Shown: piece after piece, positions 9,878 to 44,657 of the stretch | Layout of the letters: each line of letters opens with the position of its first letter | Position numbering within the stretch: position 1 is the stretch's first letter | Virus record (IMG/VR): IMGVR_UViG_3300044712_002668 | Location: 271,989-335,988 of that record | Strand: one strand, 5' to 3' | DNA length: 64,000 nucleotides | Position numbers and translations under genes: made by a program | The notes under the pieces: generated by a model | What the model was told of the DNA's origin: nothing | Databases searched by the model: none | Seen by the model: the letters and a program-made list of their open reading frames with translations, nothing else

Positions 9878-10126
9878 ATGAAAGTTATAATTCTGAAAAA
9901 GAATGATTGGTATGGATCAGAGTATGGTTTTGGTGCTACCAGAGATTATATTTATGGTTTCGGTGCCACCAGAGATTATTTTCATGGCTGTGGTTATGGG
10001 GTTAGCGATGTGGATGGCGGTGGTTGGGGTGTTGGTGCTGGTTATGGAGGCGGTTGTGGTTTTGGAGATGGAGATGGTTATGGTGATATTAGATGGAAAA
10101 ATACAAAAGGTGTTTGCGAGTATTGA
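9878..10126 (+). CDS. Gly-rich MKV.IL family protein (cluster 1)
   Basis: MKVIILKKNDW plus GxG core; internal YGFGATRDY duplication. Confidence 0.7.
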   Translation: MKVIILKKNDWYGSEYGFGATRDYIYGFGATRDYFHGCGYGVSDVDGGGWGVGAGYGGGCGFGDGDGYGDIRWKNTKGVCEY

Positions 10127-10371
10127 TCCTGAATAAACATAATTGGATGAGAGAAGAGGATGGCGCTGGCTATGGTCATGGCGATGGTCATGGCGATGGT
10201 TGTGGCGATGGTAATGGTTGCAATAGTGACTCCAGTAGTCATTATTATTATCGTCATGGCCGTGGTTATGCTGATGGATTTGGTTTTGGAACAGGTATTG
10301 GCGAAGGAAGTGGCCGTAATCCTGGTTGTGGTTATAATGGTTATGGCGATGGAATTTTATATGAAAGATGA
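10114..10371 (+). CDS. Gly-rich MKV.IL family protein (cluster 1), probable TTG start
   Basis: (L)RVLILNKHNW plus GHGDG repeats. Confidence 0.65.
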   Translation: MRVLILNKHNWMREEDGAGYGHGDGHGDGCGDGNGCNSDSSSHYYYRHGRGYADGFGFGTGIGEGSGRNPGCGYNGYGDGILYER

Positions 10372-10524
10372 CATCGTAACAATACAGATGACTCGTGCTC
10401 AGGCCGAGTACGTTGAAAAATGCGTTGATGCAAGAAGGATAAAAGGTTCAAAAGGTAGAGAGTTCGCTGCTTGGAGAGCTATAAAGAAAGCCCTTGGCAC
10501 TTGGAAAGAAGAAAATAAAACCAA

Positions 10525-10890
10525 ATGACAAGAGAACAAACAATAGGTTTGGCTGTTTCATATTTGATTATCGATGGTCTACGAGATCATACTCAGATCT
10601 TTCACACCATCCAACGTGCCTGTGAATTGGCTCGCACCAAAACTCCAGACGTTATCATTACAAGAGACCATGCCGTTGCTCTAAGAAATCTCTCCGGCCT
10701 TGAATATGAACTTCTTAAAATAAAAGATGTTTCATTGGAAGAAGTTTGTAATGCTTTTGTTCTTCGTAGAACTAATATGATAGAGGATTATAAGAATCTT
10801 CTTGATGCTTCCGATGGAGATGAAAATGATAGTCTCCTGGTTTGGTTGAGGGAACAAGCAAAGATTCTAGGTCTGGAAATAGAAAGATAA
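10525..10890 (+). CDS. Hypothetical protein
   Basis: Coupled ORF. Confidence 0.6.
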   Translation: MTREQTIGLAVSYLIIDGLRDHTQIFHTIQRACELARTKTPDVIITRDHAVALRNLSGLEYELLKIKDVSLEEVCNAFVLRRTNMIEDYKNLLDASDGDENDSLLVWLREQAKILGLEIER

Positions 10891-10900
10891 TGGTGCTGCC

Positions 10901-13156
10901 ATGATGCAGAATCGCTATCCAGGTAAGTGTCAGAGTTGTAATGTTCCCTTGGCTGCTGGAGAAGGTTTCGCTTACAAGAACGGTTATCGTTGGCTTCAAT
11001 GTTGTAACTCAACCGCTTGTATCAATCGTCTGGGTTTGAAAGCCCCCGCTTCCGCTGATATTCGCGGAGAACGAAAGATTACCGAGATTGGTGAGATTAT
11101 CATGGGATTTGATAGGGATGCCGTTCCTCTTATCAAATCTCTTCCTGGGGCTCGTTGGAACCCTGACAATAAGCTTTGGACTGTCTCTGTTATTCCTCGT
11201 GACCTTCCCCGTGTCATTGAGGTTTGCGATCAGTTGAAGCTGGATATTCCAGAATCTCTCAGGGCTTCTTTGAATGCCGGAACCGTGGACAGCAACAAGG
11301 CCCGAGCGAGAGCCGAAGCTGCTCGCCGCCATGATGGCAAAACTTTGTTCGAGTTCCAAAAGGATGGCGTTGTTTTCTTGGCTCTGCACGATCATGCACT
11401 CCTAGCGGACGATATGGGACTTGGAAAGAGCGTGCAGGCTCTTGTTGCTCTCCCTGATAATGCTCAGGTGCTTCTAATCTGCCCGGCTGCTGTAAAGTAT
11501 AACTGGCAGAACGAAGCCAAGATGTGGCGTCCCGAATTTGAAACCATCGTTTGTGAAGGCAAGGATTCCTTTGTTCTTCCCAAGCCTAATCAAATTGTTA
11601 TCATCAATTATGAAATCCTTCCCGCCTTTCTGGTTCCCAAAGAAGTTGAAGGTAAACTCACCAAGAGTGGTAAGCCATATAAGGAAGCTCCCATTCCTGA
11701 TGATATCAGAAAGGAATTGAAGAATGTTATTTTGATTGGGGATGAGTTCCATAAGGTAAAGAATTATAAGAGCATGATGTCCCAGAAGATTGGGGCTATG
11801 ACCAAACTCTGCAAGGTTGTTTGGGCTCTTACCGGTACTCCTCTTATGACTCGCCCTCAGGATTTGTTTGGGATGTTGGCATCTGGCAACATGTATCCAT
11901 TTGGTTCATGGGACAAGTTTGTTGAGAGGTTCAACGGATATAGAGGGCAGTATGGAATAGTATTTGGGAATCCCAAGCCGGAAGTTCCGGAGATGTTGAA
12001 GCGAGTATCTATTCGCCGTTTGAAGACTGAGGTTTTGAAGGATCTTCCCACGAAGATTTATAAGGATATCCTTGTTGATATTGATAAGACTTTGAAGAAG
12101 TATCTTGATAAGGTTACATTGGAGATTGCAATCAATCAGGGACATGTAATTACTGATGAAGAGATTGCTGATGCCAAAAAGAATATGGATGATGTGGCTT
12201 TGAAGATTAATATGAATGACCTTCCTAACTTCAAGGAGTTCTCCACTATCAGGCGTATGTTGGCTGAGGCCAGAATCCCTGCCATGATGGAGATTGTTGA
12301 GAGTTATGAGGATAGCGAAACTCCTCTGGTTGTTTTCTCCGCTCATACCAAGCCTCTTGAGGAACTTGGTAAGCGTGATGGTTGGGGTATTATTACTGGT
12401 GATACTCCCGCTGTTACTCGTGAAAAGGCCAAGCAGGATTTCCAAGCCGGTAAGTTGAAGGGTATCGCTGTTGCTATCAAGGCAGGTGGTGTGGGTATTA
12501 CACTCACACATGCTAGTCATGCATTGTTTGTGGATTTGGATTGGACGCCTGGATTGAATATACAGGCTGAGGATCGTATTTGCCGGATTGGAGCAACAAC
12601 CGAGAATGTATTGATTCAGAGGATGACATCAAATCATCCAATGGATCAGCATATTAATAAGTTGATTTGCAAGAAGATAGCATTGATGTATGAGGCATTG
12701 GACAAGTCAATCAAGGTCAAGCCGTTGAAGAAGCGGCCTGAGAAGATTGAATTGGTAGAGGAGACTGAGGCTGATATGTTGGCGCGAATTGAAGCGGCCG
12801 GCAAGGAAGCTGAAAAGCAATTTTACAAGGATAAGGTTCATGGAATTTTGGGAAGGGAGTTGGCAAGGGCAGAAGGAATACCGGAACCCAAGCTTACACC
12901 CAAGCGCAAGGAATTGATATTGAGGGCTTTGGATTATATGGCATCTCGTTGTGATGGAGCTGAGAGCCGGGATTATATGGGTTTCAATAAGCCCGATGCG
13001 GCGATTGCTCAATGGTTGTATGGAGCTGAGTTTGCAGAGGATGAAGTAATCTGGAGGGTTACCGAAAGAATTTTGAGTAGGTATTATAGGCAGCTTGTTA
13101 CCATTGGTAAGGAGTTTGGAGAGGACTTTACTGCTATCTGGAAGCCAGATGTATAA
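10901..13156 (+). CDS. SNF2/SWI2-family helicase (HARP/SMARCAL1-like) with N-terminal Zn finger
   Basis: ADDMGLGKS, DEFH, LTGTP, GGVGITLT, QAEDRICRIG motifs. Confidence 0.9.
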   Translation: MMQNRYPGKCQSCNVPLAAGEGFAYKNGYRWLQCCNSTACINRLGLKAPASADIRGERKITEIGEIIMGFDRDAVPLIKSLPGARWNPDNKLWTVSVIPRDLPRVIEVCDQLKLDIPESLRASLNAGTVDSNKARARAEAARRHDGKTLFEFQKDGVVFLALHDHALLADDMGLGKSVQALVALPDNAQVLLICPAAVKYNWQNEAKMWRPEFETIVCEGKDSFVLPKPNQIVIINYEILPAFLVPKEVEGKLTKSGKPYKEAPIPDDIRKELKNVILIGDEFHKVKNYKSMMSQKIGAMTKLCKVVWALTGTPLMTRPQDLFGMLASGNMYPFGSWDKFVERFNGYRGQYGIVFGNPKPEVPEMLKRVSIRRLKTEVLKDLPTKIYKDILVDIDKTLKKYLDKVTLEIAINQGHVITDEEIADAKKNMDDVALKINMNDLPNFKEFSTIRRMLAEARIPAMMEIVESYEDSETPLVVFSAHTKPLEELGKRDGWGIITGDTPAVTREKAKQDFQAGKLKGIAVAIKAGGVGITLTHASHALFVDLDWTPGLNIQAEDRICRIGATTENVLIQRMTSNHPMDQHINKLICKKIALMYEALDKSIKVKPLKKRPEKIELVEETEADMLARIEAAGKEAEKQFYKDKVHGILGRELARAEGIPEPKLTPKRKELILRALDYMASRCDGAESRDYMGFNKPDAAIAQWLYGAEFAEDEVIWRVTERILSRYYRQLVTIGKEFGEDFTAIWKPDV

Positions 13157-13158
13157 AT

Positions 13159-14024: not shown

Positions 14025-14334
14025 AAAATTATTCTTTCTCTTAAGAAATCTTTTTGAGATGATAATTATAAATCTTTTTCCTAAACTATACCAAAGAAAG
14101 TTTTATTCTTCTTCAATGCCATTGCCTTTATTTACTGCAGTATCAAGCAATCATTGGTCTGTAAGGTACTTCAATCTTTTTCCAAGTGCTATAGTTCGAA
14201 GATTCAAGATTATGACCAAGGAAGAATTTATGAAGTTCATGGATGAATGTATAGATTATGCTCCTGATTATAAATCTCAATTCATGCTTAATAAACATAA
14301 GAAAAATTTCGAGGAGCTGACCAGAGATTCTGAC

Positions 14335-15399: not shown

Positions 15400-16272
15400 A
15401 TGGCATCTCACTCCACTGGTAGCTTTGTAATTGGTTTCGGACCTCTCACGTGTATGGTAAAGACCTACGTTTCAGCATCACCAACTCGTATTGGGTTCAA
15501 GTGGATCAATAAGAAGACGGGTAATCTTGTTGGTCAGAAGAAGTTTGACAAGGTAACTAACGAGGAAGTTCAGCAAGCAGATATTATTAATGGATATGAA
15601 TATTCCAAGGATAAGTATCTACACTTTACTGATGTAGAGGTAGATAATATGCAGGCTACGAAGAAGGATACGATGGAGATTGCGGAGTTCGTTCCGATCA
15701 GTTCCATTGATCCGTTGCAGGTAGAGAAGACGTTTTACCTACAGCCTGATAAGGGTCAGGATGGTAATTACAAGTTGTTCTCTGTTGTTCTAGCCAAGTG
15801 TGGCAGGGCTGCTGTTGGTAAGTGGGTATCACGAGGCAAGGAACATCTTGTTGTGATTCGTGCTTATCAGCATGGAATTATTATGCACCAGATGTTCTAT
15901 CATAATGAGGTGCGTGGTTTTGAGGATAAGTGTTCTGCTGTTCCGCTCAATGAGAGGAACGTAAAGATTGCTGAGGAAATGATTTCTTATGGTTTGAGTG
16001 AGACGTTTGATTCCAAGAAGTATGCAGATATGTTTGTTGATAAGTTGAATGCTGCCGTGGCAAAGAAGTTGGCCAATCCTGATGAGCCGATTACTGCTGA
16101 TACCGGAGCTGCTTTGAAGGTTATTGATCAGGGCGATGCAATGCTCGCTTGGCTTGATGCAAAGCGTAAGGAGAAGGCCCAGCCTGTTGCCGAGCCTGTT
16201 GTTGAGAAGCCTGAGCCTCTCAAGTTGACCTCCAAGCCTGCCAAGAAGGCCAGGGCAAAGAAGGCTTCTTAA
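15400..16272 (+). CDS. ku: Ku DNA end-binding protein (NHEJ)
   Basis: IGFGPLT..VKTY, GYEYSKDKY, MEIAEFVP...IDP...KTFYLQP, RGKEHLV.IR; basic tail. Confidence 0.9.
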   Translation: MASHSTGSFVIGFGPLTCMVKTYVSASPTRIGFKWINKKTGNLVGQKKFDKVTNEEVQQADIINGYEYSKDKYLHFTDVEVDNMQATKKDTMEIAEFVPISSIDPLQVEKTFYLQPDKGQDGNYKLFSVVLAKCGRAAVGKWVSRGKEHLVVIRAYQHGIIMHQMFYHNEVRGFEDKCSAVPLNERNVKIAEEMISYGLSETFDSKKYADMFVDKLNAAVAKKLANPDEPITADTGAALKVIDQGDAMLAWLDAKRKEKAQPVAEPVVEKPEPLKLTSKPAKKARAKKAS

Positions 16273-19845: not shown

Positions 19846-20805
19846 CTATTTGATTTGATTATAAACATCTTTAAATAATCTTGCTATCTTTACAAGCTCA
19901 CTTATATGTGAGCTTTTTTTATTCTTACCAAACACACCAGAGATATACTTTTCTGCTTCTTGCAGGGTTTTCAATGGTTCCTTCCTTAATACGGATTCGT
20001 GTTTGGTTGCTTTACCATGAGCCTTTTCATAATTATCCCCATCATAAATCATATGTTCACACTCTATGATTTCATGAATGAGTATAGGGATGAGTTCTTT
20101 CTTTTCATAGTGTGATTCAATCCATATCGTATTGTTTGGTACATAGGAATACCTTCCAGGGTTTCCTCCCATAACAAAATCAGTATCAAACTTCTGACGT
20201 ACCAAATTACCATCTACAAGATTTACTTTATAACCGTATACTTCGCCAATTTCTTTTGTAACAACATCTTTATCAGAGATGTTTTTATGTTTTTTATATT
20301 TATCCATTCTCTTTTCTGGAGAATCTTTCTCTTTCCATAAAACAATTATACGTTTATCTACGGGTTTTTTATGGTTATCCTTTGGAAATGTAAACCATAT
20401 CGGAGCGAATTCTTTTTGTGTGATGATTTTATATTCACCAACTGAAGGATCCATTATCTCTATCTCTGTATCGTTGATGTCAGATACTACAGAATAATGA
20501 GAATCATCATTGCTAAACCACTCTACAATGATTTGATAATTCTCTTTCAATAATTTCTCTACTTCTTTAAAAGAAGAATTGTTTTTTATATAACCTTTAA
20601 GATTATATTTCTTGGCACCGCTTAAAAGATCTTCAGCTTCTATACCATGCTCTTCAGTGGCACCGATATTCTTGGCAATATCTTCCAACTCTTCATGGGT
20701 ATTATAGAAATGCAGGATGCTTTTCAGACATGCCGGTCCACAGAAACCTGGGGTCTGATCAATCGCTATAGGTTTTTTATAAAACTTTTCTTCAGCTTTC
20801 GTCAT
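19846..20805 (-). CDS. C39-family cysteine peptidase fused to an HExxE domain
   Basis: QTPGFCGPACL, SHYSVV, IMDP triad; C-terminal VDG..VR...HEIIEC domain paralogous to 27744..28280. Confidence 0.8.
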   Translation of the reverse strand: MTKAEEKFYKKPIAIDQTPGFCGPACLKSILHFYNTHEELEDIAKNIGATEEHGIEAEDLLSGAKKYNLKGYIKNNSSFKEVEKLLKENYQIIVEWFSNDDSHYSVVSDINDTEIEIMDPSVGEYKIITQKEFAPIWFTFPKDNHKKPVDKRIIVLWKEKDSPEKRMDKYKKHKNISDKDVVTKEIGEVYGYKVNLVDGNLVRQKFDTDFVMGGNPGRYSYVPNNTIWIESHYEKKELIPILIHEIIECEHMIYDGDNYEKAHGKATKHESVLRKEPLKTLQEAEKYISGVFGKNKKSSHISELVKIARLFKDVYNQIK

Positions 20806-20845: not shown

Positions 20846-23281
20846 ATGAAAGCAAACAAAGAACAGAATTTAAACAAGCATTTGTACTGTGTGATGCTTA
20901 TGGCCATGCATTGTGCTGAATATCTTGGCGTCAATGATACGGCTCTCAAAGAGGTCATCGGGCTTTCTGCTTTCCTTCATGACGTAGGTAAGGCTACCAA
21001 ATATTTTCAAAACATCTCCCTCAGGGAAGAGAAGACCAGCACCAAAAAGTTTTTCGATCTTATTCGTGAACAGTATCCCCAATTTTCCGGAGAGGATGGT
21101 AAGGATTGGTATCCGAGGCATAACGAAATCTCATGGTTGTGGGCGGCTCTACACGCTACCGGTAAGTCTCTGTTCAAGAAGGTTGGCCTCCAAGCTATCT
21201 ATTGGCATCACGGAACCTTTGATATCAACCCTATCCGAGATACTGATACCAAATCCCTTGTAGAAGAATTGACCAAGTTCTCTCCCGATGAATGGAAAAC
21301 CATTGACCAAACAATCAAATCCCTTATTGATAATACAAACTTTCCTTTTGATATTACAAAGTATCTTGATGATAACATTGAACATTGTAAGATGTCACCT
21401 TTGTTTGATATTGAAGATAAGGCTGCCAATAATGGCATGATTGAAAACGCTCAGCGTTGGGTTATTCGTAGTTGTGTGATGTATGCTGATGCTACTGTTT
21501 CAAGGATGTCTTCCGATGAATTGAATGATCTAATTCTCAATAGAAATCCAGCTACTTATTTCAAGCCTTATTATCTCTCTGTGAAGCCTGAGTTTGTTTG
21601 TCCTGAAGGTTACGATCCGGAACGTTTCAGGATTCAGAGTGAGATTTATAAGAGTTGTAATCATACTACGGTTGTAAAGGCTCCTGCTGGTTTCGGTAAG
21701 ACCTTGATTGGTTTGATGTGGGGCCTGCTACATGGACAACAGTTCTATTGGGTTTGCCCTCGTAATGATGTTGCCCAAGGCGTTTTCGAAAACATCAAGG
21801 AAGAACTCCGTAGACTTAACATCAATATCAATGTTGAATTGTTCCTGACATCGGAACGTCAAGACTCATTTGGACCGAATGTACCGCATGTACATGGTAC
21901 GTGTGACATTGTGGTAACGAACATTGATATGTTGATGGCTCCATTGCAGAGTCACAAGCATGCATGCAGGGTTTTTGATATCAATGCTCGTAACATTATC
22001 ATGGATGAGTTCCATGAGTTGATTGGTGATGAAGGAATGTTTTCGGCCTTTATCAATTATATGAGGGCTCGCAATTTGATTTGCTCAAATACGAGAACCT
22101 TGCTCTTGTCAGCTACTCCTTCCGTCCTGAATGAACTTTGGGATAGCGATACAAAGCAAACCAGGCTTCTTCCAGATGATGAACATCATTATAAGGCTCA
22201 GCATGATAAGCCTTATTACTTCAAGTTCGCTACTGCAATGCCCACCAAGCCGTTGCCTGGCTCGTTGAGTATGTATTGCAGCATTTCCACTGTCATTGTA
22301 AATTACAATCCAAGAGTTCATACGGCAATTATTCACAGTCATTATCCAACGAATTACAAGAAGGACATTTTGAATGGAATTTTCAAGACCTTTGGAAAGG
22401 GAGGGGATAAGAATGGGACTGTGATATCAGCGCCTATTCTACAGGCTGCATTTGATATTTCATTCAGGAGTATGTATAAGGCAGTTGAATCTCCTGAGGG
22501 AGACATTCAGCCACTTGGGCGTGTGAATCGTTGGGGAGAGTTGGAGAGTGCAGAGGTTGTGTTGGTACCTTTGGCGGCTTCTAATCCTAGTGAACGGGGA
22601 GCAATCAATACCCGATATGATTTGGACCTGCACCGGGATTGGTTGAAGTATTTGAAGAACAATATAAAGTCAAAGGCTACGTTGGATGAGGTTTATTCTT
22701 TGTATAATGCTTACAATAATGTTGCCAAGCCGAAGTTGATATCTTATTATTACAGGTGTTTGGATAAGGCAACTGAGAGATTGTCAAAGTTCTTCCCCAA
22801 GGACTTCGGAGTTTCCCGGCCTTCTCGTGATAATATCAAATCGGTTTCAAATCTGAGAAGTTATTCTCCATCATTCTTTATTGTAGTAAGGAATTTGAAG
22901 ACCAAGGATTGGCATCCATTTGCTTTCAATATTCAGAACTATGATTTGGATGAGTGCATAAGTGAAAACCGGGAGAAGTTGGAAGCGTATACAATTAAAA
23001 CTGTTATGGAGCATTTGAATGAATTGAAGTTTGAGGATGGCGAATGTCATTTTGATTATAGTAAGATTTTGAATAGGTTCTTCAATCCAAAGAGGAAGAG
23101 TGAGAAGAAGATTGGTGGCAAGCTTGTAAAGATAACTTCCAAGGTTCGTAAGAATTATAAGGCAGAAGATTTTATTGATTATATCAGGGAAACAAAAACG
23201 CCATTGCCGGTGTTTGATAGGTTCTTTGATCCTGTTCGTGGTTTGGTTAAGGAAGAGTTTTTGTACGCAATCAATTATTGA
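20846..23281 (+). CDS. cas3: CRISPR-associated Cas3 (HD nuclease plus SF2 helicase), no Cas2 fusion
   Basis: KHL...LHDVGKA...RHNEIS...WHHG...AD; APAGFGKT, DEFH, SATP, GRVNR; adjacent to cas genes and array. Confidence 0.92.
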   Translation: MKANKEQNLNKHLYCVMLMAMHCAEYLGVNDTALKEVIGLSAFLHDVGKATKYFQNISLREEKTSTKKFFDLIREQYPQFSGEDGKDWYPRHNEISWLWAALHATGKSLFKKVGLQAIYWHHGTFDINPIRDTDTKSLVEELTKFSPDEWKTIDQTIKSLIDNTNFPFDITKYLDDNIEHCKMSPLFDIEDKAANNGMIENAQRWVIRSCVMYADATVSRMSSDELNDLILNRNPATYFKPYYLSVKPEFVCPEGYDPERFRIQSEIYKSCNHTTVVKAPAGFGKTLIGLMWGLLHGQQFYWVCPRNDVAQGVFENIKEELRRLNININVELFLTSERQDSFGPNVPHVHGTCDIVVTNIDMLMAPLQSHKHACRVFDINARNIIMDEFHELIGDEGMFSAFINYMRARNLICSNTRTLLLSATPSVLNELWDSDTKQTRLLPDDEHHYKAQHDKPYYFKFATAMPTKPLPGSLSMYCSISTVIVNYNPRVHTAIIHSHYPTNYKKDILNGIFKTFGKGGDKNGTVISAPILQAAFDISFRSMYKAVESPEGDIQPLGRVNRWGELESAEVVLVPLAASNPSERGAINTRYDLDLHRDWLKYLKNNIKSKATLDEVYSLYNAYNNVAKPKLISYYYRCLDKATERLSKFFPKDFGVSRPSRDNIKSVSNLRSYSPSFFIVVRNLKTKDWHPFAFNIQNYDLDECISENREKLEAYTIKTVMEHLNELKFEDGECHFDYSKILNRFFNPKRKSEKKIGGKLVKITSKVRKNYKAEDFIDYIRETKTPLPVFDRFFDPVRGLVKEEFLYAINY

Positions 23282-23316
23282 AGTTCAATCAACCAACCAA
23301 CAAGGAAAAAAACAGC

Positions 23317-24429
23317 ATGTCAATCGCCAAGTCTCTGCTTCTTCGTGTCCTTTTCAATGGTGATGGAATCGTCAATTTTGATTCTCCGGATCAAAAGTAT
23401 CTTTGGAACAAGTTGGAGGGGGCAGGTTTTATCAGGCACAATAATACCATGGTTGGAAAGGCCAGGTATGAGTCAAAAAAGGTAACTCGTCAGAATCAGG
23501 ATAAAGAGGATTATGAGAAGGAGGTTTATACACGGGTTCCAATCAATTCTGCAGACTGCATTCGTCATACCATGTATGAAGATGTGATGCGAACGCATCT
23601 TCCCAATGTTCAGCATGATGATGATTGGTTGATTCGTACCATTGCAAACCCTGCTTTCATCCAGCGTGGGTATATGTTCCCCCGTGCCAACAAGGAATCT
23701 TGGAAGCGCAAGTCTTCATTGGCTTTCGGTTATGCCAAGGGTATTACGCCAAGTGTTCCGGCAATTGAAACGTTTTCAAATTCTCAAGAAAGGGATAATG
23801 TTGAGAAGAGCGAGAGTGGTTCTGAGACATCTTTCTTCTCTCGTGAGGTTCGAGGACAAGTAAATTATGAAATGACTGGAGTAATTGATTTGGCTGAGCT
23901 TGGGTTTATCTCCTTGAGTGATGTTCATGATCGTTTGGGATTCCATCCCGATCTTGATGGTGAGTTTATTGAGATGTTCAAGAAGCATTTCAAGTTTGAG
24001 GATACGATTACTTCTGGGTATTTTGTTCGTGAAGGTGATGCTTATGAGATTCCTGAGCAGGGTATTCTGCTTGGGGACAAGTATGTTATCGCCATGGTTG
24101 AGGATATCCTGAAGCGTTTGGCCAGGTTCAATTTGGTTCGTACCACTACTGGTTTTCTTCAGACTGCCAAGGTTGAGGTTATGGTTGTCAAGGATCCTTT
24201 GACTGACCGTGTTACCAATACTGATGGTTGGATTAATGTTTTTGATAATGGTAAGTTTTCTGTTGACTTTTTGAAGGGTCTCAAGATTGAGCGTGTTTAT
24301 AATGAGACCTCTATTGAGGAGGCTATTGAGAAGGTTCGGCATTATAAGGAACTGAAGAATGTTGATGAGCCGGTTGTGGAAGCCAAGCCCCCGAAGAAGC
24401 CGCGTGGCAAGAAAGAGGCGGCGGCATGA
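23317..24429 (+). CDS. cas7: Cas7 backbone subunit, type I-F2 (Cas7fv)-like
   Basis: G.GIVN, S.DCIRH, RGY, KR.S.L, TSFFS, L.FISL...DR, E.GILL, L.RLA, collinear with recalled Cas7fv motifs. Confidence 0.82.
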   Translation: MSIAKSLLLRVLFNGDGIVNFDSPDQKYLWNKLEGAGFIRHNNTMVGKARYESKKVTRQNQDKEDYEKEVYTRVPINSADCIRHTMYEDVMRTHLPNVQHDDDWLIRTIANPAFIQRGYMFPRANKESWKRKSSLAFGYAKGITPSVPAIETFSNSQERDNVEKSESGSETSFFSREVRGQVNYEMTGVIDLAELGFISLSDVHDRLGFHPDLDGEFIEMFKKHFKFEDTITSGYFVREGDAYEIPEQGILLGDKYVIAMVEDILKRLARFNLVRTTTGFLQTAKVEVMVVKDPLTDRVTNTDGWINVFDNGKFSVDFLKGLKIERVYNETSIEEAIEKVRHYKELKNVDEPVVEAKPPKKPRGKKEAAA

Positions 24430-25846: not shown

Positions 25847-25847
25847 A

Positions 25848-31674: not shown

Positions 31675-31872
31675 ATGAAAGTCTTAATTCTTAAGAAAGA
31701 AGATTGGAAATTGCCAGAGAATGATTCCAAATCAGATACTGGAGATGGTTTTGGAAAAGGGTTTGGAGGTGGATGCCGTCGCCCAACTTTTTACAGTAAC
31801 GGTAAAGGAGAAGTAGTTGGTCATGGAGATGGTAATGGTAAGGGAGAGGGTTGTGGTATTAATTGGGTTTGA
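31675..31872 (+). CDS. Gly-rich MKV.IL family protein (cluster 2)
   Basis: MKVLILKKEDWKLPE plus Gly core. Confidence 0.7.
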   Translation: MKVLILKKEDWKLPENDSKSDTGDGFGKGFGGGCRRPTFYSNGKGEVVGHGDGNGKGEGCGINWV

Positions 31873-31875
31873 TAA

Positions 31876-32109
31876 ATGAAAGTCTTGATTCTTAATAAAG
31901 AAGATTGGCAGATACCCGAACATTGTCCGGTTAATACTGTTGCAACATATGCTAGAACGAGTGATGGGGCTGGTGCTTGTAGTAACGATATGGCCACGGG
32001 TTATGGGGGTGGTTGTACTCGTTCTTTTCCACATAGGAATAATGATGGATTCGGAAGTGTAGTAGGTAATGGTTATGGCGATGGTAGAGGGTATGGTTTT
32101 CCTATATGA
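31876..32109 (+). CDS. Gly-rich MKV.IL family protein (cluster 2)
   Basis: MKVLILNKEDWQIPE. Confidence 0.7.
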   Translation: MKVLILNKEDWQIPEHCPVNTVATYARTSDGAGACSNDMATGYGGGCTRSFPHRNNDGFGSVVGNGYGDGRGYGFPI

Positions 32110-32354
32110 AAGTCCTTATCCTTAAAAAGGAACATTGGCAGATACCTGAAAAGTGTCCGGTTAATTTTATTGCTGCTTTTGAACGTTATACTGGTGGGGG
32201 TGGTCGAGCAGGTGGATGTTGCCCAGGAGGTGTAGGTTGGGGAGGAGGTTGCAATTGTGGCGATTCACCACATATTAATTTTGGATTTGGAGATATGGTA
32301 GGTAGTGGGCGTGGTGATGGTAGGGGGCACGGTAATTGTAAGGTAATTATATGA
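32106..32354 (+). CDS. Gly-rich MKV.IL family protein (cluster 2)
   Basis: MKVLILKKEHWQIPE. Confidence 0.7.
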   Translation: MKVLILKKEHWQIPEKCPVNFIAAFERYTGGGGRAGGCCPGGVGWGGGCNCGDSPHINFGFGDMVGSGRGDGRGHGNCKVII

Positions 32355-32587
32355 AGGTATTAATTCTTGATAAAGAAGATTGGCAAACACCTGAGGATAC
32401 CGGTAGAGGATCCTATCCTAAAATGTTTAAAGATATGGAACTAGGAAGAGGAAATGGTGAAGGTTTAGGTGGCGGATCTGGTTGTTATACCAGAAGTATG
32501 GGTTGTGGTTTTTATGGTTATGGACAAGTATGCGGTCAGGGTAATGGTAATGGTACGGGCAGCGGAATACATATAAGGACATACTAA
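32351..32587 (+). CDS. Gly-rich MKV.IL family protein (cluster 2)
   Basis: MKVLILDKEDWQTPE. Confidence 0.7.
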   Translation: MKVLILDKEDWQTPEDTGRGSYPKMFKDMELGRGNGEGLGGGSGCYTRSMGCGFYGYGQVCGQGNGNGTGSGIHIRTY

Positions 32588-33705: not shown

Positions 33706-34437
33706 ATGAAAAATTTCATGCTGGCCCAGTATTATGATTGGTCATTCGATCCTAAAGGATGGTTTATGTCCGAAAAACTTAATGGGCATAGGGCTGTTTT
33801 CAATAAACACTTCATAAAACGTGGTAATACAATCGTTACTCCCCCATCATGGTTTATGAAGGATTTTCCTGATGTAACCCTTGATGGTGAAATATATGCA
33901 GGAAGAGGCAATCTTCGTTTGGTTCAATCCCTTGGCCCAAGAGAACTTGATTGGAAAAATATAGTCTTTGCTGTTTTTGACGCCCCGGAATACCAAGGCC
34001 CCTTCAAAACAAGGTACTCATATATCTCTAATCTTCTAAAAAATAGACAGTATATACTTACCGTTCCTCATGTCATTTGCGAAGGCAAGGATGACCTACA
34101 GGAGCGTTTGGATGCCGTTATCGATATCAAGGGTGAAGGGTTGATGCTCCGTCATCCTGACTCATTGTACGAGCATAAACGTAGTAATAAACTTCTTAAG
34201 GTAAAGAAGTGGTATTATGATACGGCTGTAATTATTGGGCATCTTGAAAAGAATAGACCTGGGATGATTGGTTCTTTTCTATGCCGGGATGATAACGGGT
34301 ATGAATTCAAGGTAACGGGATTGAATGATGCGTTGGCAAGCAATCCATATCCAATTGGAACAAGATTGGAGTATAGGTATTATGAGAAGAATAAGGGAAA
34401 GCCAAAGCCTGCCACATTATTCAGGGTTATAAATTGA
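33706..34437 (+). CDS. Minimal ATP-dependent DNA ligase
   Basis: SEKLNGHRA (KxxG), LDGEIY, FAVFD, EGLMLR, RS..LLKVK; OB fold. Confidence 0.88.
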   Translation: MKNFMLAQYYDWSFDPKGWFMSEKLNGHRAVFNKHFIKRGNTIVTPPSWFMKDFPDVTLDGEIYAGRGNLRLVQSLGPRELDWKNIVFAVFDAPEYQGPFKTRYSYISNLLKNRQYILTVPHVICEGKDDLQERLDAVIDIKGEGLMLRHPDSLYEHKRSNKLLKVKKWYYDTAVIIGHLEKNRPGMIGSFLCRDDNGYEFKVTGLNDALASNPYPIGTRLEYRYYEKNKGKPKPATLFRVIN

Positions 34438-37297: not shown

Positions 37298-37344
37298 AGT
37301 ATCCTGATGAATCAATCCATTAAGGATTGTTAAGGAAAGTAAAA

Positions 37345-38076
37345 ATGAAGCTCAATCAAGTTCTGGCAATTGAAGAGTCCGTAAAGAAGCAACCTTTGGC
37401 GGATCTGACTCAGGCTTACCACATTGCGCAGAAGCCGGATCTTTTTACTGGTTTCAATCGTACATGGCATCCTCGTTTTGAGGATGGAGTAAAGTATCCT
37501 GAAGAGAGTAAGATTGTTCAACAGAATACTCTTGAGTTGATCAAGAGTGTTACTGCTCAAATGAGCGAGATGTTTAACATTGTTGCTACAAAGGATATTG
37601 CCAATTGTTCGGCCAAGGCTGATATCATTGTGGATGAGGTGGTGCTGGTGGCAGCGGTGCCGGTTACCTACCTGATTTTCCTTGAGAAGAAGCTGGTTGA
37701 TCTGCGGACTTTCGTTTCCAAGCTTCCTGTACTTGACCCGAGCAAGAAGTGGAGCTATAACGCTCAGGACGGGCTGTATAGGTCTGAGCCTGAGGAACGG
37801 CTCAAGACAAAGAAGACAGTTCGTCCTATTGTGAAATATGATGCTACTAAAGAGCATCCTGCACAAACAGAGTTGATTTCAGAAGATATTGTAGAGGGGA
37901 GCTGGAAGGAGACTCATCTTTCCGGTGCATTGGCAAGAGATACTGTCAAGTTCATGTTGGATAAGATTTCCAAGTTGGAGCAAGCTGTAAAGGTTGCTCG
38001 TGAGAAGGCCAATTCGATTGATGTAGAGAGATCGAAGATTGGTGAAGTGGTTTTGAACTACCTCTTTTCGGTATAA
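37345..38076 (+). CDS. Conserved coiled-coil protein (MKLNQ..A.E family, also seen in bacteria), function unknown
   Basis: LNQVLAIE, F.GF.RT..P..E.G..YPEE, PVTYLIFLEK.L, Y.AT.EHPAQ, W....SGA, AVK.ARE.AN. Confidence 0.75.
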   Translation: MKLNQVLAIEESVKKQPLADLTQAYHIAQKPDLFTGFNRTWHPRFEDGVKYPEESKIVQQNTLELIKSVTAQMSEMFNIVATKDIANCSAKADIIVDEVVLVAAVPVTYLIFLEKKLVDLRTFVSKLPVLDPSKKWSYNAQDGLYRSEPEERLKTKKTVRPIVKYDATKEHPAQTELISEDIVEGSWKETHLSGALARDTVKFMLDKISKLEQAVKVAREKANSIDVERSKIGEVVLNYLFSV

Positions 38077-39060: not shown

Positions 39061-39062
39061 AT

Positions 39063-40166: not shown

Positions 40167-40175
40167 AGGTGTTAT

Positions 40176-41371: not shown

Positions 41372-41391
41372 AAGGGTAAAGGTATACGAGT

Positions 41392-42012: not shown

Positions 42013-42243
42013 GATGATTACGCTAAATACAGTAGGTTTTTGTTTTGTTTTATCATCAATCATATCATTGTTTCATTTATTTGTAAACAGAGGAAATTCT
42101 TATGGAATTGAAACTTATACGTTGATATTTTTCATGAATGCATTAACGGCAGCAATCCTTTTCTATATGCATTATCATATGGAAAATGGTAAAGAAGAAA
42201 AGAAACCCAGATCAGGACCGCAGTGGTTGTAAGGAGAAAAGAA

Positions 42244-42708
42244 ATGACAACAGAATCAATGGTACTTAGTGAGATTGAAACAATCAAGAAGCTCCGAAAG
42301 GAAACGTCAGCTCCGTTGGCTATCTGCAAAGAAGCCGTACAAAAACTTGGAACACATGATTTTGATAATCTTCTTCAGTATATCAAGAATTTTTCAGGGT
42401 ATAGTGTCAAGAGTAAAGAGAATGCAAATCGTTGTTATGTGATTAGATCTTATGTACATCATACCAATCAGCTTGGTGTGTTGGTCAGGATCTCTGTTGA
42501 TACCGATTTTGCAGCTAAAAGTCAGGAAGTTATTGATTTTACAGATGGTTTGGCAATGACAATTGCTGCAAATAACCCAACGGATTTTTCTGTAAAGATT
42601 CCTTGGGTTATGGATGAAAACTTTACAGTTGAGCAGCAAAAAAATAAACTGGAAGCACAGATAAAAGAATCAATTCAGATTCATGATTGGCATTTTATGA
42701 GGTCGTAA
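42244..42708 (+). CDS. tsf: Elongation factor Ts, short/truncated form
   Basis: IKKLRKETSAP...CKEA UBA-like domain; SYVHH...GVLV.I..DTDF.AK. Confidence 0.8.
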   Translation: MTTESMVLSEIETIKKLRKETSAPLAICKEAVQKLGTHDFDNLLQYIKNFSGYSVKSKENANRCYVIRSYVHHTNQLGVLVRISVDTDFAAKSQEVIDFTDGLAMTIAANNPTDFSVKIPWVMDENFTVEQQKNKLEAQIKESIQIHDWHFMRS

Positions 42709-42971
42709 TGGTAAGTAATATATCTAAAGAAGAGTGGGCTTTAATTATAGCTCACAAAATGTTAATAGAATTGGTAGATGAGGCTGTTAAGCTTAATGAT
42801 TACTCTCATGTACTAAATTATATCGCTATTGTAGTAAGCCCTATATTGGATAATTTTTTTAAAGAGGTAAGGGTTAATGATGGAGATCCTGATCTTAGAA
42901 TGAATAGATTAAGACTTATGAAATCAATAAGTAAACAGTGTTTAAGAATTGCGGACTTTTCCAAATTATGA
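42708..42971 (+). CDS. Stand-alone GlyRS beta-subunit C-terminal (DALR anticodon-binding) domain
   Basis: P.LDNFF.EV.VND.D.DLR.NRL.L......ADFSKL. Confidence 0.75.
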   Translation: MVSNISKEEWALIIAHKMLIELVDEAVKLNDYSHVLNYIAIVVSPILDNFFKEVRVNDGDPDLRMNRLRLMKSISKQCLRIADFSKL

Positions 42972-43201
42972 AAGTCTTAATCCTTAACAATAGAGATTGG
43001 ATGATAGAAGAAAAATGTTATGGGTATGGTTGTTGTAATTATGGCAATGGAGGTGGTGATGGGTGCGGTGACGGAAATATAGTATCTGGATGTGGTTTTG
43101 GGGTTGGTTATGCAGATGCTCGTCAAGGGTTTTTTGGTGGCACCGGGGCTGGATGTGTTTTTGGACATGGCGATGGATCTGGAATCGGATATGGAAAATG
43201 A
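42968..43201 (+). CDS. Gly-rich MKV.IL family protein (cluster 3)
   Basis: MKVLILNNRDW. Confidence 0.7.
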   Translation: MKVLILNNRDWMIEEKCYGYGCCNYGNGGGDGCGDGNIVSGCGFGVGYADARQGFFGGTGAGCVFGHGDGSGIGYGK

Positions 43202-43428
43202 AAGTCATTATTCTTAACAAAAAAGAATGGCAAAAACCAGAAACTGGTTTTAGTTGTGGTGATAATTTATATCTTATGAACGGTTCTGGTTATGCAGATG
43301 GTTTTGGTGGTATGATGGGTAACGCTTCTGGTGGTGGACTTTCAGATTTGGGGAATTGTTATAAAGGATTTGGATGTGGTATAGCTTGGGGTCATGGTCA
43401 GGGTGATGGGACAGGCGAACGTGAATGA
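43198..43428 (+). CDS. Gly-rich MKV.IL family protein (cluster 3)
   Basis: MKVIILNKKEWQKPE. Confidence 0.7.
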   Translation: MKVIILNKKEWQKPETGFSCGDNLYLMNGSGYADGFGGMMGNASGGGLSDLGNCYKGFGCGIAWGHGQGDGTGERE

Positions 43429-43679
43429 AGGTCATTATATTTAATCATAATGATTGGAAAACATTAGAGCATGGTCCTGGGCGTGGTGCTCATACAGACG
43501 GTGAGGGTCGTGCTGATGGTTGTAAATGTTATGGTGCTTATAATGTAGTTTGTAGAAGTGTTTCTGGAGGCGGTTATGCAGAGGGGGTTTGTTGTTTTTG
43601 GTGTCCGCCACAAGGTTATTTCAGGGGACATGGATTTGGTGCGGCGCCTGGTTGTGGCCAAGGTAATGGAACAGGATAA
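43425..43679 (+). CDS. Gly-rich MKV.IL family protein (cluster 3)
   Basis: MKVIIFNHNDW. Confidence 0.7.
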   Translation: MKVIIFNHNDWKTLEHGPGRGAHTDGEGRADGCKCYGAYNVVCRSVSGGGYAEGVCCFWCPPQGYFRGHGFGAAPGCGQGNGTG

Positions 43680-43921
43680 TGAGGGTCATTATACTTAATC
43701 ATAATGACTGGCAGATACCAGAAGATAGTTGTGGGTGGGGAGCTTCAGCAACTACTGAATTTGGTAATGGTCTTGCTGATATAAGCCGTAATGATGTGGT
43801 AATTGGTATTGGTGATGGTTATGCAGATGGCCCTTGCGGTATTTTTCGTGGATTCGGATATGGCAGAACATATGGTTGTGGTTCGGGAAATGGTACAGGT
43901 TATGGACATGGAAGAGAATGA
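43679..43921 (+). CDS. Gly-rich MKV.IL family protein (cluster 3)
   Basis: MRVIILNHNDWQIPE. Confidence 0.7.
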   Translation: MRVIILNHNDWQIPEDSCGWGASATTEFGNGLADISRNDVVIGIGDGYADGPCGIFRGFGYGRTYGCGSGNGTGYGHGRE

Positions 43922-44181
43922 AAGTATTAATTCTTAATAAAAAAGATTGGCAAACACCAGAGGGAACCGGACTTGCTTTAACTGGTTGTGGTCGTGCAGA
44001 TGGAGCTGGCCCAACAGGATTTCCGATACGTGATGGTGGGGTTGGTTATGGTTATGGAGATGGTCGTCAGTGTATTTCACAAGGACAAGTAGATGAAGAT
44101 GGCCATTTTATTTTTTTTCAAGGATATGGAATTGGCTCGGTACCTGGTTATGGCCAAGGTAATGGTACTGGAACAGGATAA
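43918..44181 (+). CDS. Gly-rich MKV.IL family protein (cluster 3)
   Basis: MKVLILNKKDWQTPE. Confidence 0.7.
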   Translation: MKVLILNKKDWQTPEGTGLALTGCGRADGAGPTGFPIRDGGVGYGYGDGRQCISQGQVDEDGHFIFFQGYGIGSVPGYGQGNGTGTG

Positions 44182-44417
44182 TGAAGGTTCTTATTCTTAA
44201 TAAAGAACATTGGCAGATACAGGAATATGATGGCTGTGGTAGTGGACTTGCTCTTTGGGGTTGTGGCTGTGCAGAAGGTGCCGGTCTAATAAACAAAAAA
44301 GGTGGAGATGGTTATGGTTATGGAGATGGCTACTGTGGCTATCGTTGGATTTCACAAGGATGTGGAATTGGTGCAGCTCCTGGTTACGGTCAAGGTAATG
44401 GCAATGGAACAAGTTAA
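44181..44417 (+). CDS. Gly-rich MKV.IL family protein (cluster 3)
   Basis: MKVLILNKEHWQIQE. Confidence 0.7.
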   Translation: MKVLILNKEHWQIQEYDGCGSGLALWGCGCAEGAGLINKKGGDGYGYGDGYCGYRWISQGCGIGAAPGYGQGNGNGTS

Positions 44418-44657
44418 ATGAAAGTACTTATCCTTAACAAGGAACATTGGCAGATACAAGAAAATGGTATTGGATATGGTAACACATATACCGTAAAGGG
44501 ACTTGGTGGTGGGCGGGCTGATATCTATACTATTAATAAAGGAAGGAATTTCGGAGAAGGTTATGCAGATGGTTATAGGGGTGATCAGGTTAATGTAGAT
44601 AATAAATTTAAAATTGCTAATGGTTGTGGTCGTGCTTCTGGATGCGTATCAATATGA
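44418..44657 (+). CDS. Gly-rich MKV.IL family protein (cluster 3)
   Basis: MKVLILNKEHWQIQE. Confidence 0.7.
   Translation: MKVLILNKEHWQIQENGIGYGNTYTVKGLGGGRADIYTINKGRNFGEGYADGYRGDQVNVDNKFKIANGCGRASGCVSI

What the first reader, a model, noticed from the sequence alone, without database searches (positions are those of the whole stretch)
9878..44657. Thirteen-member family with a fixed MKVLILNK.DWQ.PE leader and hypervariable Gly/Cys core, in three tandem arrays
Seen: 2 genes at 9878-10371, 4 at 31675-32587 and 7 at 42968-44657, about 65-90 aa, mostly translationally coupled. The first 11-15 residues are conserved. The cores keep GxG/ADG/G.GNGTG spacing but vary in all other positions, with many Cys, Tyr and Phe. 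Inference: either leader/core precursors like RiPPs (a radical SAM enzyme, an ATP-grasp ligase and a C39 peptidase, all classic RiPP maturation classes, are in this window) or a diversified polyglycine-II-bundle binder library for anti-defence or receptor blocking.
Basis: partly seen in the sequence, partly recalled or inferred. Interest (0 to 1): 0.62.

Follow-up and report, generated by a model that had tools for sequence, protein, structure and literature searches.

The report
Glycine-rich small-protein family in a megaphage
A giant phage related to Bacillus phage G carries 30 copies (13 in this window) of a small protein with a fixed 15-residue head and a fast-changing, disordered glycine-every-second-residue tail; it belongs to no described family, does not look like an antibiotic-type peptide precursor, and its function is still unknown.

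Summary
The 336-kb virus record holds 17 more upstream, 30 in all. Related metagenomic phage contigs also carry several copies each.

The 15-residue N-terminus follows the pattern four hydrophobic residues, D/N, x, x, D/E, W, x, x, x, E. It is under protein-level purifying selection, shown by synonymous codon differences. It is better conserved across the clade than flanking orthologues.

The rest of each protein is a (Gly-X)n tract: 33% Gly with a strict period of 2, mostly acidic, predicted disordered. It changes by in-frame indels, patches of nonsynonymous change, and deletion by recombination between leaders.

The RiPP reading is weak:
- No maturase gene lies beside any array.
- The genome has no PqqD, YcaO or LanC hit.
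- The "radical SAM" protein belongs to a family found in 172 T4-like phages that show no sign of this family.
- The leader has no double-glycine site for a C39 peptidase.

The polyglycine-II reading fails because Gly recurs every 2 residues, not 3, and AlphaFold finds no fold.

Best guess: the head is a shared docking or address peptide and the tail a variable disordered payload. My favoured concrete version is a T4-style capsid-targeting tag cut after Glu15. That version is inferred, not shown.

The parts
9878..10126 (+). Family gene 1, array 1 (82 aa). Contains an internal 30-nt tandem repeat at 9923-9994.
10114..10371 (+). Family gene 2, array 1 (85 aa). TTG start; overlaps gene 1 by 13 nt. 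Contains a 12-nt tandem repeat at 10167-10217.
31675..31872 (+). Family gene 3, array 2 (65 aa).
31876..32109 (+). Family gene 4, array 2 (77 aa).
32106..32354 (+). Family gene 5, array 2 (82 aa). ATGA overlap with gene 4.
32351..32587 (+). Family gene 6, array 2 (78 aa). ATGA overlap with gene 5. Its stop overlaps the start of a metallophosphoesterase gene.
42968..43201 (+). Family gene 7, array 3 (77 aa).
43198..43428 (+). Family gene 8, array 3 (76 aa).
43425..43679 (+). Family gene 9, array 3 (84 aa). In a freshwater strain, codons 24-43 carry 9 nonsynonymous base changes and there is a 6-nt deletion. The listed changes leave the leader and the C-terminal part unchanged.
43679..43921 (+). 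Family gene 10, array 3 (80 aa). Missing, together with gene 11, in one contig of a freshwater strain (joint 43683 to 44186 between two leaders).
43918..44181 (+). Family gene 11, array 3 (87 aa).
44181..44417 (+). Family gene 12, array 3 (78 aa). A 6-nt in-frame deletion at 44394 is seen in two freshwater runs.
44418..44657 (+). Family gene 13, array 3 (79 aa).

Best explanation
SHOWN
- These are real protein-coding genes of one family, found so far only in a small clade of phage-G-like giant phages.
- Each protein has a conserved 15-residue N-terminal peptide: four hydrophobic residues, D/N, x, x, D/E, W, x, x, x, E.
- The rest is 30-85 residues of a mostly acidic (Gly-X)n low-complexity tract that is predicted to be disordered.
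- The tract changes by in-frame indels, clustered nonsynonymous change, and recombination between leaders that removes whole genes.

INFERRED
- The N-terminal peptide is a common docking or address tag that brings every paralogue to the same partner.
- The tract is a fast-evolving payload in the phage-host arms race. The genes sit in accessory regions among ArdC-like, PcfJ-like, Ku, ligase, SNF2 and CRISPR-Cas genes.

FAVOURED CONCRETE VERSION (about 0.2 on its own)
- The tag works like the T4 capsid-targeting sequence. It would load the proteins into the prohead and be cut after the near-invariant Glu15 by the head maturation protease.
- The unstructured acidic peptides would then be packed with the DNA and ejected into the next host without needing to unfold.
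For: Coding and selection
- In leader codons 2-15, identity is 0.77 at positions 1 and 2 against 0.51 at position 3.
- 47% of same-residue pairs use different codons.

Clade-wide conservation
- Related contigs L003, L004, L005/L006, L030, L032/L033 and L041 carry family copies. All but L041, which has one, carry several, often in tandem.
- The leader keeps about 10-11 of 15 residues between this genome and L030. Flanking orthologues are only 34-44% identical.
- The leader profile hits only the 30 Gly-rich ORFs in the genome.

Disorder
- AlphaFold gives pLDDT 77-88 for the leader and 30-46 for the core.
- The Atlas model has mean pLDDT 0.40.
- The only PDB 'relatives' listed are low-complexity stretches: the top hit is an engineered GS linker, others are RG-type repeats.

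Diversification
- 4 of 5 differences between the 99.8%-identical L005 and L006 fall in family genes, and all 4 change the protein.
- Strain data show a leader-to-leader deletion of two genes, 6-nt in-frame indels and a patch of 9 nonsynonymous changes.
- Two window genes contain internal tandem repeats.

Precedent for the capsid-tag version
- T4 internal proteins are a diverse set of defence proteins that share only a capsid-targeting sequence (PMC3012670).
- T4 capsid-targeting sequences are 10-20 residues long. The giant-phage SPN3US paralogues gp53 and gp54 keep an identical 15-residue N-terminus ending S-x-E-15 while the rest has diverged (PMC5694885).
- Here E15 is present in 28 of 30 copies.
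- The genome has a homologue of the phage G gp19 head maturation protease.
Against: - There is no expression or virion evidence. All seven sequencing runs found are DNA.
- The tag is not shared with unrelated proteins, as the T4 sequence is.
- The genes lie in the non-structural part of the genome, inside long co-directional operons with no recognisable promoter.
- The cleavage specificity of the phage-G-type protease is unknown. It matches no Pfam protease family.
- The PF03420 search found nothing, but it also found nothing in the control genomes, so it is uninformative.
- The major capsid protein is neither T4-like nor phiKZ-like.
- T4 internal proteins are basic; these proteins are mostly acidic.
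- In relatives, the distance from the start Met to the motif varies by 0-4 residues.
Confidence: 0.35

Rival explanations
1. Free cytoplasmic effectors or decoys. The proteins are not packaged. The N-terminal peptide binds a conserved host or phage hub protein by strand addition. The disordered (Gly-X)n tail then blocks, sequesters or phase-separates with variable targets such as defence proteins.
For: - The genes sit in accessory, early-like regions next to ArdC-like, PcfJ-like, Ku, ligase, SNF2 and CRISPR-Cas genes.
- The proteins are mostly acidic and predicted disordered.
- They turn over quickly between strains.
- A DUF6948 gene lies directly upstream of the largest array, overlaps the family gene on L041, and is fused to a similar tract in P0096.
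Against: - No partner has been identified.
- DUF6948 is far more widespread than this family, and the adjacent cases come from related phages, so they are not independent.
- It is unclear why one conserved hub would need 30 different tails.
Confidence: 0.2
2. RiPP-type precursors. The 15-residue leader guides a modifying enzyme (the rSAM/SPASM-like protein, the R2K ATP-grasp or another), and a protease such as the C39-domain protein releases modified Gly/Cys/Tyr-rich cores.
For: - The layout is leader plus variable core, in many paralogues.
- A SPASM-domain protein, an R2K ATP-grasp and a C39-domain protein are all in the window.
- A short hydrophobic strand is the kind of leader element that RiPP recognition domains bind (my own knowledge, not tested here).
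- GYG and Cys motifs are common in the cores.
Against: - No enzyme lies beside any array, here or within 6 to 10 kb of family genes on four related contigs.
- The genome has no PqqD, YcaO, LanC or Radical_SAM Pfam hit.
- The rSAM-like protein is phrog_7293 and is present in 172 T4-like phages that show no sign of the family.
- That gene sits next to a sugar-nucleotide epimerase/dehydratase gene.
- The leader has no double-glycine site.
- There is no usable GrrA or microcin B17 model hit.
- The 'core' is 50-70 residues with a conserved Gly skeleton, and Cys is not conserved.
Confidence: 0.1
3. Structural, self-assembling material. The period-2 Gly pattern would let strands stack into silk-like sheets, or form hairs on the capsid anchored by the N-terminal strand. 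Sulphur-globule envelope proteins and decoration proteins are loose analogies.
For: - Gly recurs strictly every second residue, and Tyr and Phe are frequent.
- Similar tracts hit the sulphur globule protein family weakly.
- The N-terminal strand could add to a capsid sheet (inference only).
Against: - The X residues are often charged (D, R) and very variable.
- There is no predicted sheet.
- The genes are far from the structural module at about 8-65 kb of the record.
- 30 variants are hard to explain for a structural role.
Confidence: 0.1
4. By-products of slippage-prone DNA. These would be tolerated low-complexity ORFs, expanded by unequal recombination, with little or no function of their own.
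For: - In-frame indels of 6 and 12 nt, and internal tandem repeats.
- Similar (GYGDG)n tracts are scattered as add-ons on many unrelated small phage proteins.
Against: - The leader is under strong purifying selection and is conserved across diverged phages.
- All 30 frames are intact, and 17 of 21 junctions overlap the next start.
- The family is kept in multiple copies in at least five different related phage contigs.
Confidence: 0.07
5. Polyglycine-II bundle binders, like snow-flea antifreeze protein or the gp38 adhesin tip.
For: High Gly content, and variable residues between the glycines.
Against: - Polyglycine-II helices need Gly every third residue (established structural knowledge). Here the period is 2: Gly-Gly distance counts are 386 at 2 residues against 67 at 3.
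- No confident fold in two AlphaFold runs.
- No PDB hit to such proteins among those listed.
Confidence: 0.03

Closest known systems
T4 internal proteins with capsid-targeting sequence, and SPN3US gp53/gp54 (PMC3012670, PMC5694885)
   Same: - A short N-terminal peptide (10-20 residues in T4; an identical 15 in gp53/gp54) ending in Glu is the only conserved part of otherwise diverged phage paralogues.
- The loci are plastic and tied to counter-defence.
   Different: - No sequence similarity to those proteins was found.
- The tag here is restricted to one Gly-rich family.
- The proteins are mostly acidic and disordered, not folded and basic.
- The phage is G-like, and its protease specificity is unknown.
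- Packaging and cleavage have not been tested.
Multi-precursor RiPP families such as prochlorosins (own knowledge), GrrA/OscA1 (TIGR04260) and microcin B17 (NF041037)
   Same: Many paralogues share a conserved leader with variable, Gly/Cys-containing bodies.
   Different: - The leader is only 15 residues, and the body is long with a conserved Gly skeleton.
- There is no maturase nearby and no recognition domain in the genome.
- Model hits are absent or below cut-off.
(GYGDG)n tracts on other small phage proteins carrying DUF7666, DUF6948 or TIGR02996 domains
   Same: The same kind of period-2 Gly tract, rich in Y, D, S and N, appears as an N- or C-terminal add-on.
   Different: - Those proteins carry a folded domain in place of the 15-residue leader.
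- They match the family profile only through the tract.
- Their function is also unknown.
Disordered Gly-rich translocation domains of colicins, and PE-PGRS proteins of mycobacteria (own knowledge, analogy only)
   Same: A short conserved recognition element is joined to a Gly-rich, disordered or polymorphic region.
   Different: - No homology was found or tested.
- The organisms and repeat periods differ.
- These are leads recalled from memory, not tests.

Membership tests
RiPP precursor peptides (general) | A dedicated modifying enzyme is encoded with the precursors or co-occurs with them. | tested here: not met
   - No enzyme lies next to any array, or within 6 to 10 kb of family genes on L005, L030, L032 or L041.
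- The rSAM-like protein occurs in 172 T4-like phages that show no sign of the family.
RiPP precursor peptides (general) | A leader recognition element (PqqD-like domain) or a class-defining enzyme (YcaO, LanC, Radical_SAM) is present in the genome. | tested here: not met
   PF05402, PF02624, PF05147 and PF04055 give no hit in the 336-kb record, while control genomes do. About 119 kb of the parent contig could not be searched.
RiPP precursor peptides (general) | The core is post-translationally modified and the leader is removed. | not testable with these tools
   This needs mass spectrometry.
Double-glycine leader peptides (C39 substrates) | GG, GA or GS at positions -2 and -1 of a 15-30 residue leader with the LSxxELxxIxGG-type pattern (own knowledge). 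| tested here: not met
   The leader ends in E and is then mostly followed by x-G-x-G. There is no fixed GG.
GrrA/OscA1 Gly-rich rSAM-modified RiPPs (TIGR04260) | Match to the family model. | tested here: not met
   None of the 13 window members hits the model at E up to 1. Three members scanned at E up to 10 give no hit either; only unrelated tract proteins score E 1.8-7.2.
Microcin B17 family (NF041037) | Match to the family model, plus a YcaO-type cyclodehydratase. | tested here: not met
   One member of 13 scores E 0.018, too weak to place the family. The genome has no YcaO.
Polyglycine-II bundle proteins | Gly every third residue, and a compact bundle fold. | tested here: not met
   The Gly period is 2. 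Core pLDDT is 30-46 in two runs.
T4-type capsid-targeting sequence proteins | A short N-terminal peptide (10-20 residues) is conserved among otherwise diverged proteins. | tested here: met
   definition from PMC5694885.
T4-type capsid-targeting sequence proteins | The peptide ends at an x-x-Glu site that the prohead protease cuts. | tested here: inconclusive
   - E15 is present in 28 of 30 copies.
- A homologue of the phage G gp19 protease is present.
- The protease specificity is unknown.
- The complex prediction gave no verdict.
T4-type capsid-targeting sequence proteins | The tag is shared by unrelated packaged proteins. | tested here: not met
   The leader profile hits only the 30 Gly-rich ORFs.
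T4-type capsid-targeting sequence proteins | The mature proteins are present in virions. | not testable with these tools
   The phage is uncultured, and all seven sequencing runs found are DNA.
ClpX N-motif-2 degron (Met-basic, three hydrophobic, x5, hydrophobic; examples in PMC9775585, Table 2) | Fixed spacing from the N-terminal Met-basic pair. | tested here: not met
   Copies in this genome fit (M-K-V-L-I, five residues, W). Relatives start in other ways, for example M-I-I-L-D, M-L-P-I-L-I-L-D or M-N-V-L-Y, so Met-basic is not conserved.
TIGR02996 domain (ADWLEE motif) | Match to the domain model. | tested here: not met
   P0140 matches at E 2.2e-10. Family members do not match even at E up to 10. 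There is only a loose resemblance of D-W-L-x-E-x-G.

The most novel reading that the evidence does not exclude
This is a new class of phage effector: a library of intrinsically disordered (Gly-X)n proteins that all carry one 15-residue address peptide. The tails themselves would do the work, for example as pore-threading peptides ejected with the DNA, or as a selective gel or condensate that excludes host defence proteins. The phage would renew the library by slippage and leader-to-leader recombination.
Probability: 0.2. Interest if true: 0.8.

Novelty: new variant of a known kind. Interest (0 to 1): 0.58.

Why it matters
Giant phages carry hundreds of unannotated small genes. This family takes up about 7 kb of one genome and matches nothing usable in Pfam, PHROGs or NCBIfam.

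It is conserved across a clade of phage-G-like megaphages from soil and freshwater metagenomes. It shows a clear split into a constrained 15-residue head and a fast-changing disordered tail.

If the head is an address tag, it would extend the T4 capsid-targeting principle to a very different phage lineage. It could also serve as a portable tag for loading cargo.

If the tails act directly, they would be a rare case of functional low-complexity, disordered proteins in phage-host conflict.

The work also shows that period-2 Gly tracts are a recurring add-on to small phage proteins. As far as I could find, this has not been described.

Tried and rejected
- Family libraries. Pfam, PHROGs and NCBIfam scans of the family gave nothing usable.
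- Cultured phages. DNA and protein searches of the phage collection found no match. Bacillus phage G, the closest cultured relative by capsid protein, lacks the family under the same search that finds 30 copies in this genome.
- Collection scans. A profile scan and a leader pattern scan of viral contigs found no members. The metagenome pattern scan gave 23 hits, all chance matches, many of them one unrelated protein family sharing I-L-N-F-E-D-W.
- Structure. Two AlphaFold jobs gave no fold for the core, so no fold search was run.
- Complex prediction. Family member against the N-terminal 310 residues of the homologue of the phage G gp19 protease: no verdict (score 0.00). This is evidence neither for nor against binding.
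- ClpX N-motif-2 degron. Rejected because the Met-basic spacing is not kept in relatives.
- Diversity-generating retroelement. Rejected because the strain differences are not adenine-specific and include indels.
- Gene conversion. No other paralogue in the genome matches the variant patch in gene 43425.
- Promoter, terminator and upstream-motif inspection. Uninformative; the arrays lie inside operons.
- Rfam and tRNA scans of the window. Nothing found.
- T4-type protease and capsid Pfam searches. No hit, but the controls did not ring either, so these are uninformative.
- PDB profile search. The listed matches are low-complexity stretches such as GS linkers and RG-type repeats.
- Literature search for DUF7666, DUF6948 and TIGR02996. 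No papers found.
- Limits kept.
Full report
WHAT IS THERE

Thirteen + strand ORFs of 65-87 aa begin with M-[K/R]-V-[L/I]-I-[L/F] at window positions 9878, 10114 (TTG start), 31675, 31876, 32106, 32351, 42968, 43198, 43425, 43679, 43918, 44181 and 44418. A degenerate DNA pattern for K-V-x-I-L-x4-W matches 11 times in the window, against 0.02 expected from shuffles.

The window is the last 64 kb of a 335,988-bp IMG/VR virus record. The record's proteins are also seen on a 454,833-bp contig. A profile of the 13 proteins finds 30 matches in that record. Reading them out gives 17 more complete genes upstream of the window, at C1 235.5-236.4 kb, 243.6 kb, 247.7-251.4 kb and 255.7 kb. The family therefore has 30 members and takes up about 7 kb.

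THE GENES ARE CODING, AND THE HEAD IS CONSTRAINED AS PROTEIN

- In leader codons 2-15, pairwise identity is 0.77 at codon positions 1 and 2 but 0.51 at position 3.
- 47% of pairs with the same residue use different codons.
- V3 and W11 are invariant. I5 and L6 occur in 29 of 30 copies and E15 in 28 of 30.
- Twelve of 21 junctions between neighbouring family genes are ATGA overlaps, four more overlap by one base, and one pair overlaps by 13 nt.
- A profile of the first 16 residues hits only these 30 ORFs in all six frames of the genome.

THE BODY

After residue 16 the composition is 33% Gly, 6% each Tyr, Ser, Asp and Asn, 4.6% Cys and 3.9% Phe. Most members have a calculated pI of 4.2-6.

Gly recurs with a strict period of 2. 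Counts of Gly-Gly distances are 386, 317 and 288 at 2, 4 and 6 residues, against 58, 67 and 76 at 1, 3 and 5. The C-terminal part keeps a G-x-G-x3-G-x-G-x-G-x-G-x-G skeleton.

Cys is not a family feature. Window copies average 3.7 Cys and the others 2.3. Relatives on L030 carry at most one Cys each. A related strain replaces two Cys in gene 43425.

AlphaFold was run with 30 and then 52 aligned sequences. It gives pLDDT 77-88 for the leader, with a short helix at residues 8-11, and 30-46 for everything else. The Atlas model of one member has mean pLDDT 0.40. A profile search of PDB sequences lists only low-complexity matches: the best is an engineered GS linker, others are RG-type repeats.

RELATIVES

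There is no usable hit in Pfam, PHROGs or NCBIfam. A profile search of 1.84 billion representative proteins finds only five clusters from outside this genome.

Their contigs carry further copies, all but one of them several and often in tandem:
- L003 and L004: 3-4 copies each on contigs of about 1 kb.
- L005/L006: at least 15 diverged copies in 12 kb.
- L030 (a 91-kb NCBI contig): at least 9 copies in the 20 kb read.
- L032/L033: several copies.
- L041: one copy.

These contigs share other genes with this genome at 29-71% protein identity. Examples are a PcfJ-like gene inside the largest array and an ArdC-like gene next to the member at 255.7 kb. They therefore belong to one phage clade.

The motif common to all is four hydrophobic residues, D/N, x, x, D/E, W (rarely F), x, x, x, E, then G-x-G. 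About 10-11 of 15 leader residues are the same in this genome and in L030, where flanking orthologues are 34-44% identical.

THE PHAGE

The major capsid protein (C1:46848-47888, phrog_2522) is 53.7% identical to gp27 of Bacillus phage G. The portal protein and the gp19 head maturation protease of phage G also have homologues (PMC12484599 names gp19). Phage G itself lacks the family. The DNA is held by rhizosphere runs and, as a strain roughly 96% identical, by freshwater metagenome runs.

HOW THE FAMILY CHANGES

- L005 and L006 are 99.8% identical over 9.2 kb. Four of their five differences lie in family genes and all four change the protein: 6- and 12-nt in-frame indels and two nonsynonymous changes.
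- Both differences between L032 and L033 lie at a family gene.
- In the freshwater strain, one contig joins 43683 to 44186. These are the same leader positions in two different genes, so two genes are removed.
- 6-nt in-frame deletions lie at 43559 and 44394.
- Codons 24-43 of gene 43425 carry 9 nonsynonymous base changes. The listed changes leave its leader and C-terminal part unchanged. In flanking genes the listed changes are mostly synonymous (1 nonsynonymous to 4 synonymous, 1 to 3 and 2 to 4; one gene shows 5 to 2). This list was truncated by the tool, so these are indications and not rates.
- Two window genes contain internal tandem repeats of 30 and 12 nt.
- The changes are not adenine-specific, so a diversity-generating retroelement is not the source.

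THE RiPP READING

- rSAM-like protein (48360-49406). It hits only the SPASM domain, carries Cx7Cx2C, and gives no Radical_SAM hit. It is a full-length member of phrog_7293. It has 44%-identical homologues in 172 T4-like Klebsiella, Enterobacter and Cronobacter phages. I found no sign of the family in those phages: the PHROGs scan, a tblastn search that may be blunted by low-complexity filtering, and a profile scan of 7 kb around the homologue in phage GAP161 were all negative. Here the gene lies next to a sugar-nucleotide epimerase/dehydratase gene.
- ATP-grasp (52073-52852). It belongs to the R2K clade.
- C39 domain (19846-20805, minus strand). It is fused to a region with an HExxE motif and sits divergently upstream of cas3.

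The record has no PqqD, YcaO or LanC hit. None of the related contigs has a RiPP-type Pfam domain within 6 to 10 kb of family genes. The leader lacks a double-glycine site. The GrrA model does not match, and microcin B17 scores E 0.018 for one member only. Modification itself cannot be tested here.

THE POLYGLYCINE-II READING

This fold needs Gly every third residue. The period here is 2, and no fold is predicted.

A WIDER PATTERN

A word-indexed search with the 52-sequence profile returned 181 proteins. Of the 120 listed, only one is a new protein with the leader (P0134). Most of the rest match only through a (GYGDG)n-type tract attached to other small phage domains. These domains include DUF7666 (tract at either end), DUF6948 and TIGR02996.

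The tract is therefore a recurring add-on, and this family is its smallest carrier. The single DUF6948 gene of this genome lies directly upstream of the largest array. On L041 a DUF6948 gene overlaps the family gene. On L005 it is a few hundred bases away. In P0096 it is fused to a tract. DUF6948 is much more widespread than the family, and these phages are related. This is a lead for a partner, not evidence.

INTERPRETATION

Shown: a real, selected, clade-specific, multi-copy family with a constrained 15-residue head and a fast-changing tail that is predicted disordered and carries Gly at every second position.

Inferred: the head is a common docking or address peptide and the tail a variable payload used in phage-host conflict.

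The closest functional precedent is the T4 capsid-targeting sequence. The T-even internal proteins are a diverse set of defence proteins with only that sequence conserved (PMC3012670). These sequences are 10-20 residues long. In giant phage SPN3US, the paralogues gp53 and gp54 keep an identical 15-residue N-terminus ending S-x-E-15 (PMC5694885). The near-invariant Glu15 here fits a cleavage site of that type, and a small unstructured protein could pass through a tail without unfolding.

Several points count against this model:
- The tag is not shared with other proteins.
- The genes lie outside the structural module.
- The specificity of the phage-G-type protease is unknown.
- The proteins are mostly acidic.
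- There are no expression or virion data.

I give the general statement together with this favoured version 0.35, and the capsid-tag version alone about 0.2. The rivals are free cytoplasmic effectors (0.2), RiPP precursors (0.1), self-assembling structural material (0.1), slippage by-products (0.07) and polyglycine-II binders (0.03).

NOVELTY AND SCORE

I found no description of the family. Its architecture has analogies but belongs to no known family. I file it as a new variant of a known kind (address-tagged, diversifying phage accessory proteins). There is a 0.2 chance that it is a new class of disordered effector.

Noticed in passing
window 20846-27360: A phage-borne CRISPR-Cas locus. It holds Cas3 HD-helicase (20846-23281), a Cas7/DevR-like gene (23278-24429), a 300-aa ORF with no Pfam hit (24426-25328) and a Cas6e-like gene (25325-25846). 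A CRISPR array follows at about 25843-27360, with roughly 24 degenerate repeats (core TATGTAGGGATTGAAAC) spaced about 60-73 nt apart. Tandem Repeats Finder missed the array.
   Followed up: partly
window 19846-20805 (minus strand): The C39 peptidase domain (residues 22-137) is fused to a C-terminal region with an HEIIECEH motif that looks like a metalloprotease. The gene is divergent from cas3.
   Followed up: partly
window 48360-49406: A SPASM-domain protein carries Cx7Cx2C, not the canonical CxxxCxxC of radical SAM enzymes, and gives no Radical_SAM Pfam hit. It is a full-length phrog_7293 member, with 44%-identical homologues in 172 T4-like Klebsiella, Enterobacter and Cronobacter phages, where some records annotate it as a radical SAM protein. 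Here it lies beside an NDP-sugar epimerase/dehydratase gene (50137-51156).
   Followed up: partly
window 15400-16272 and 33706-34437: A Ku-domain protein is present. A second ORF looks, by eye only, like an ATP-dependent DNA ligase, which would suggest a phage end-joining pair. The window also holds an SNF2 helicase (10901-13156), an FtsK-like ATPase (29028-30071), an EF-Ts-like protein (42223-42708) and a DUF7873 protein (37327-38076).
   Followed up: no
window 52073-52852: An ATP-grasp of the R2K clade (PF18299 and PF14243; phrog_7313). From my own knowledge, this clade is predicted to add amino acids to proteins.
   Followed up: no
G000:C1:247317-247574 (L002:1188-1604); L041:47-421; L005:10267-10599: A DUF6948 gene lies directly upstream of the largest family array, overlaps the family gene on L041, and lies near family genes on L005. 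In an unrelated protein (P0096) DUF6948 is fused to a similar Gly tract. It is a possible partner of the leader or the tract.
   Followed up: partly
proteins P0031-P0140: Period-2 (GYGDG)n tracts recur as N- or C-terminal add-ons on many small, mostly metagenomic proteins with DUF7666, DUF6948 or TIGR02996 domains. I found no paper that mentions these domains.
   Followed up: partly
G000:C1:32423-35938 (L035:12423-15938): The homologue of the phage G gp19 head maturation protease is the N-terminal ~260 residues of a 1171-aa ORF. This may be a protease-scaffold fusion. It matches no Pfam protease family.
   Followed up: partly
window 43683-44186, seen in run X3: One contig of a freshwater strain (roughly 96% identical) lacks two family genes. 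The joint lies between equivalent leader positions of two genes, which suggests copy number changes by leader-to-leader recombination.
   Followed up: partly
G000 as a whole: IMG/VR labels the 336-kb record a provirus cut from a longer contig; its proteins are seen on a 454,833-bp contig. The capsid, portal and protease proteins are phage-G-like, and most genes run in one direction. It may therefore be a free megaphage, not a prophage.
   Followed up: no
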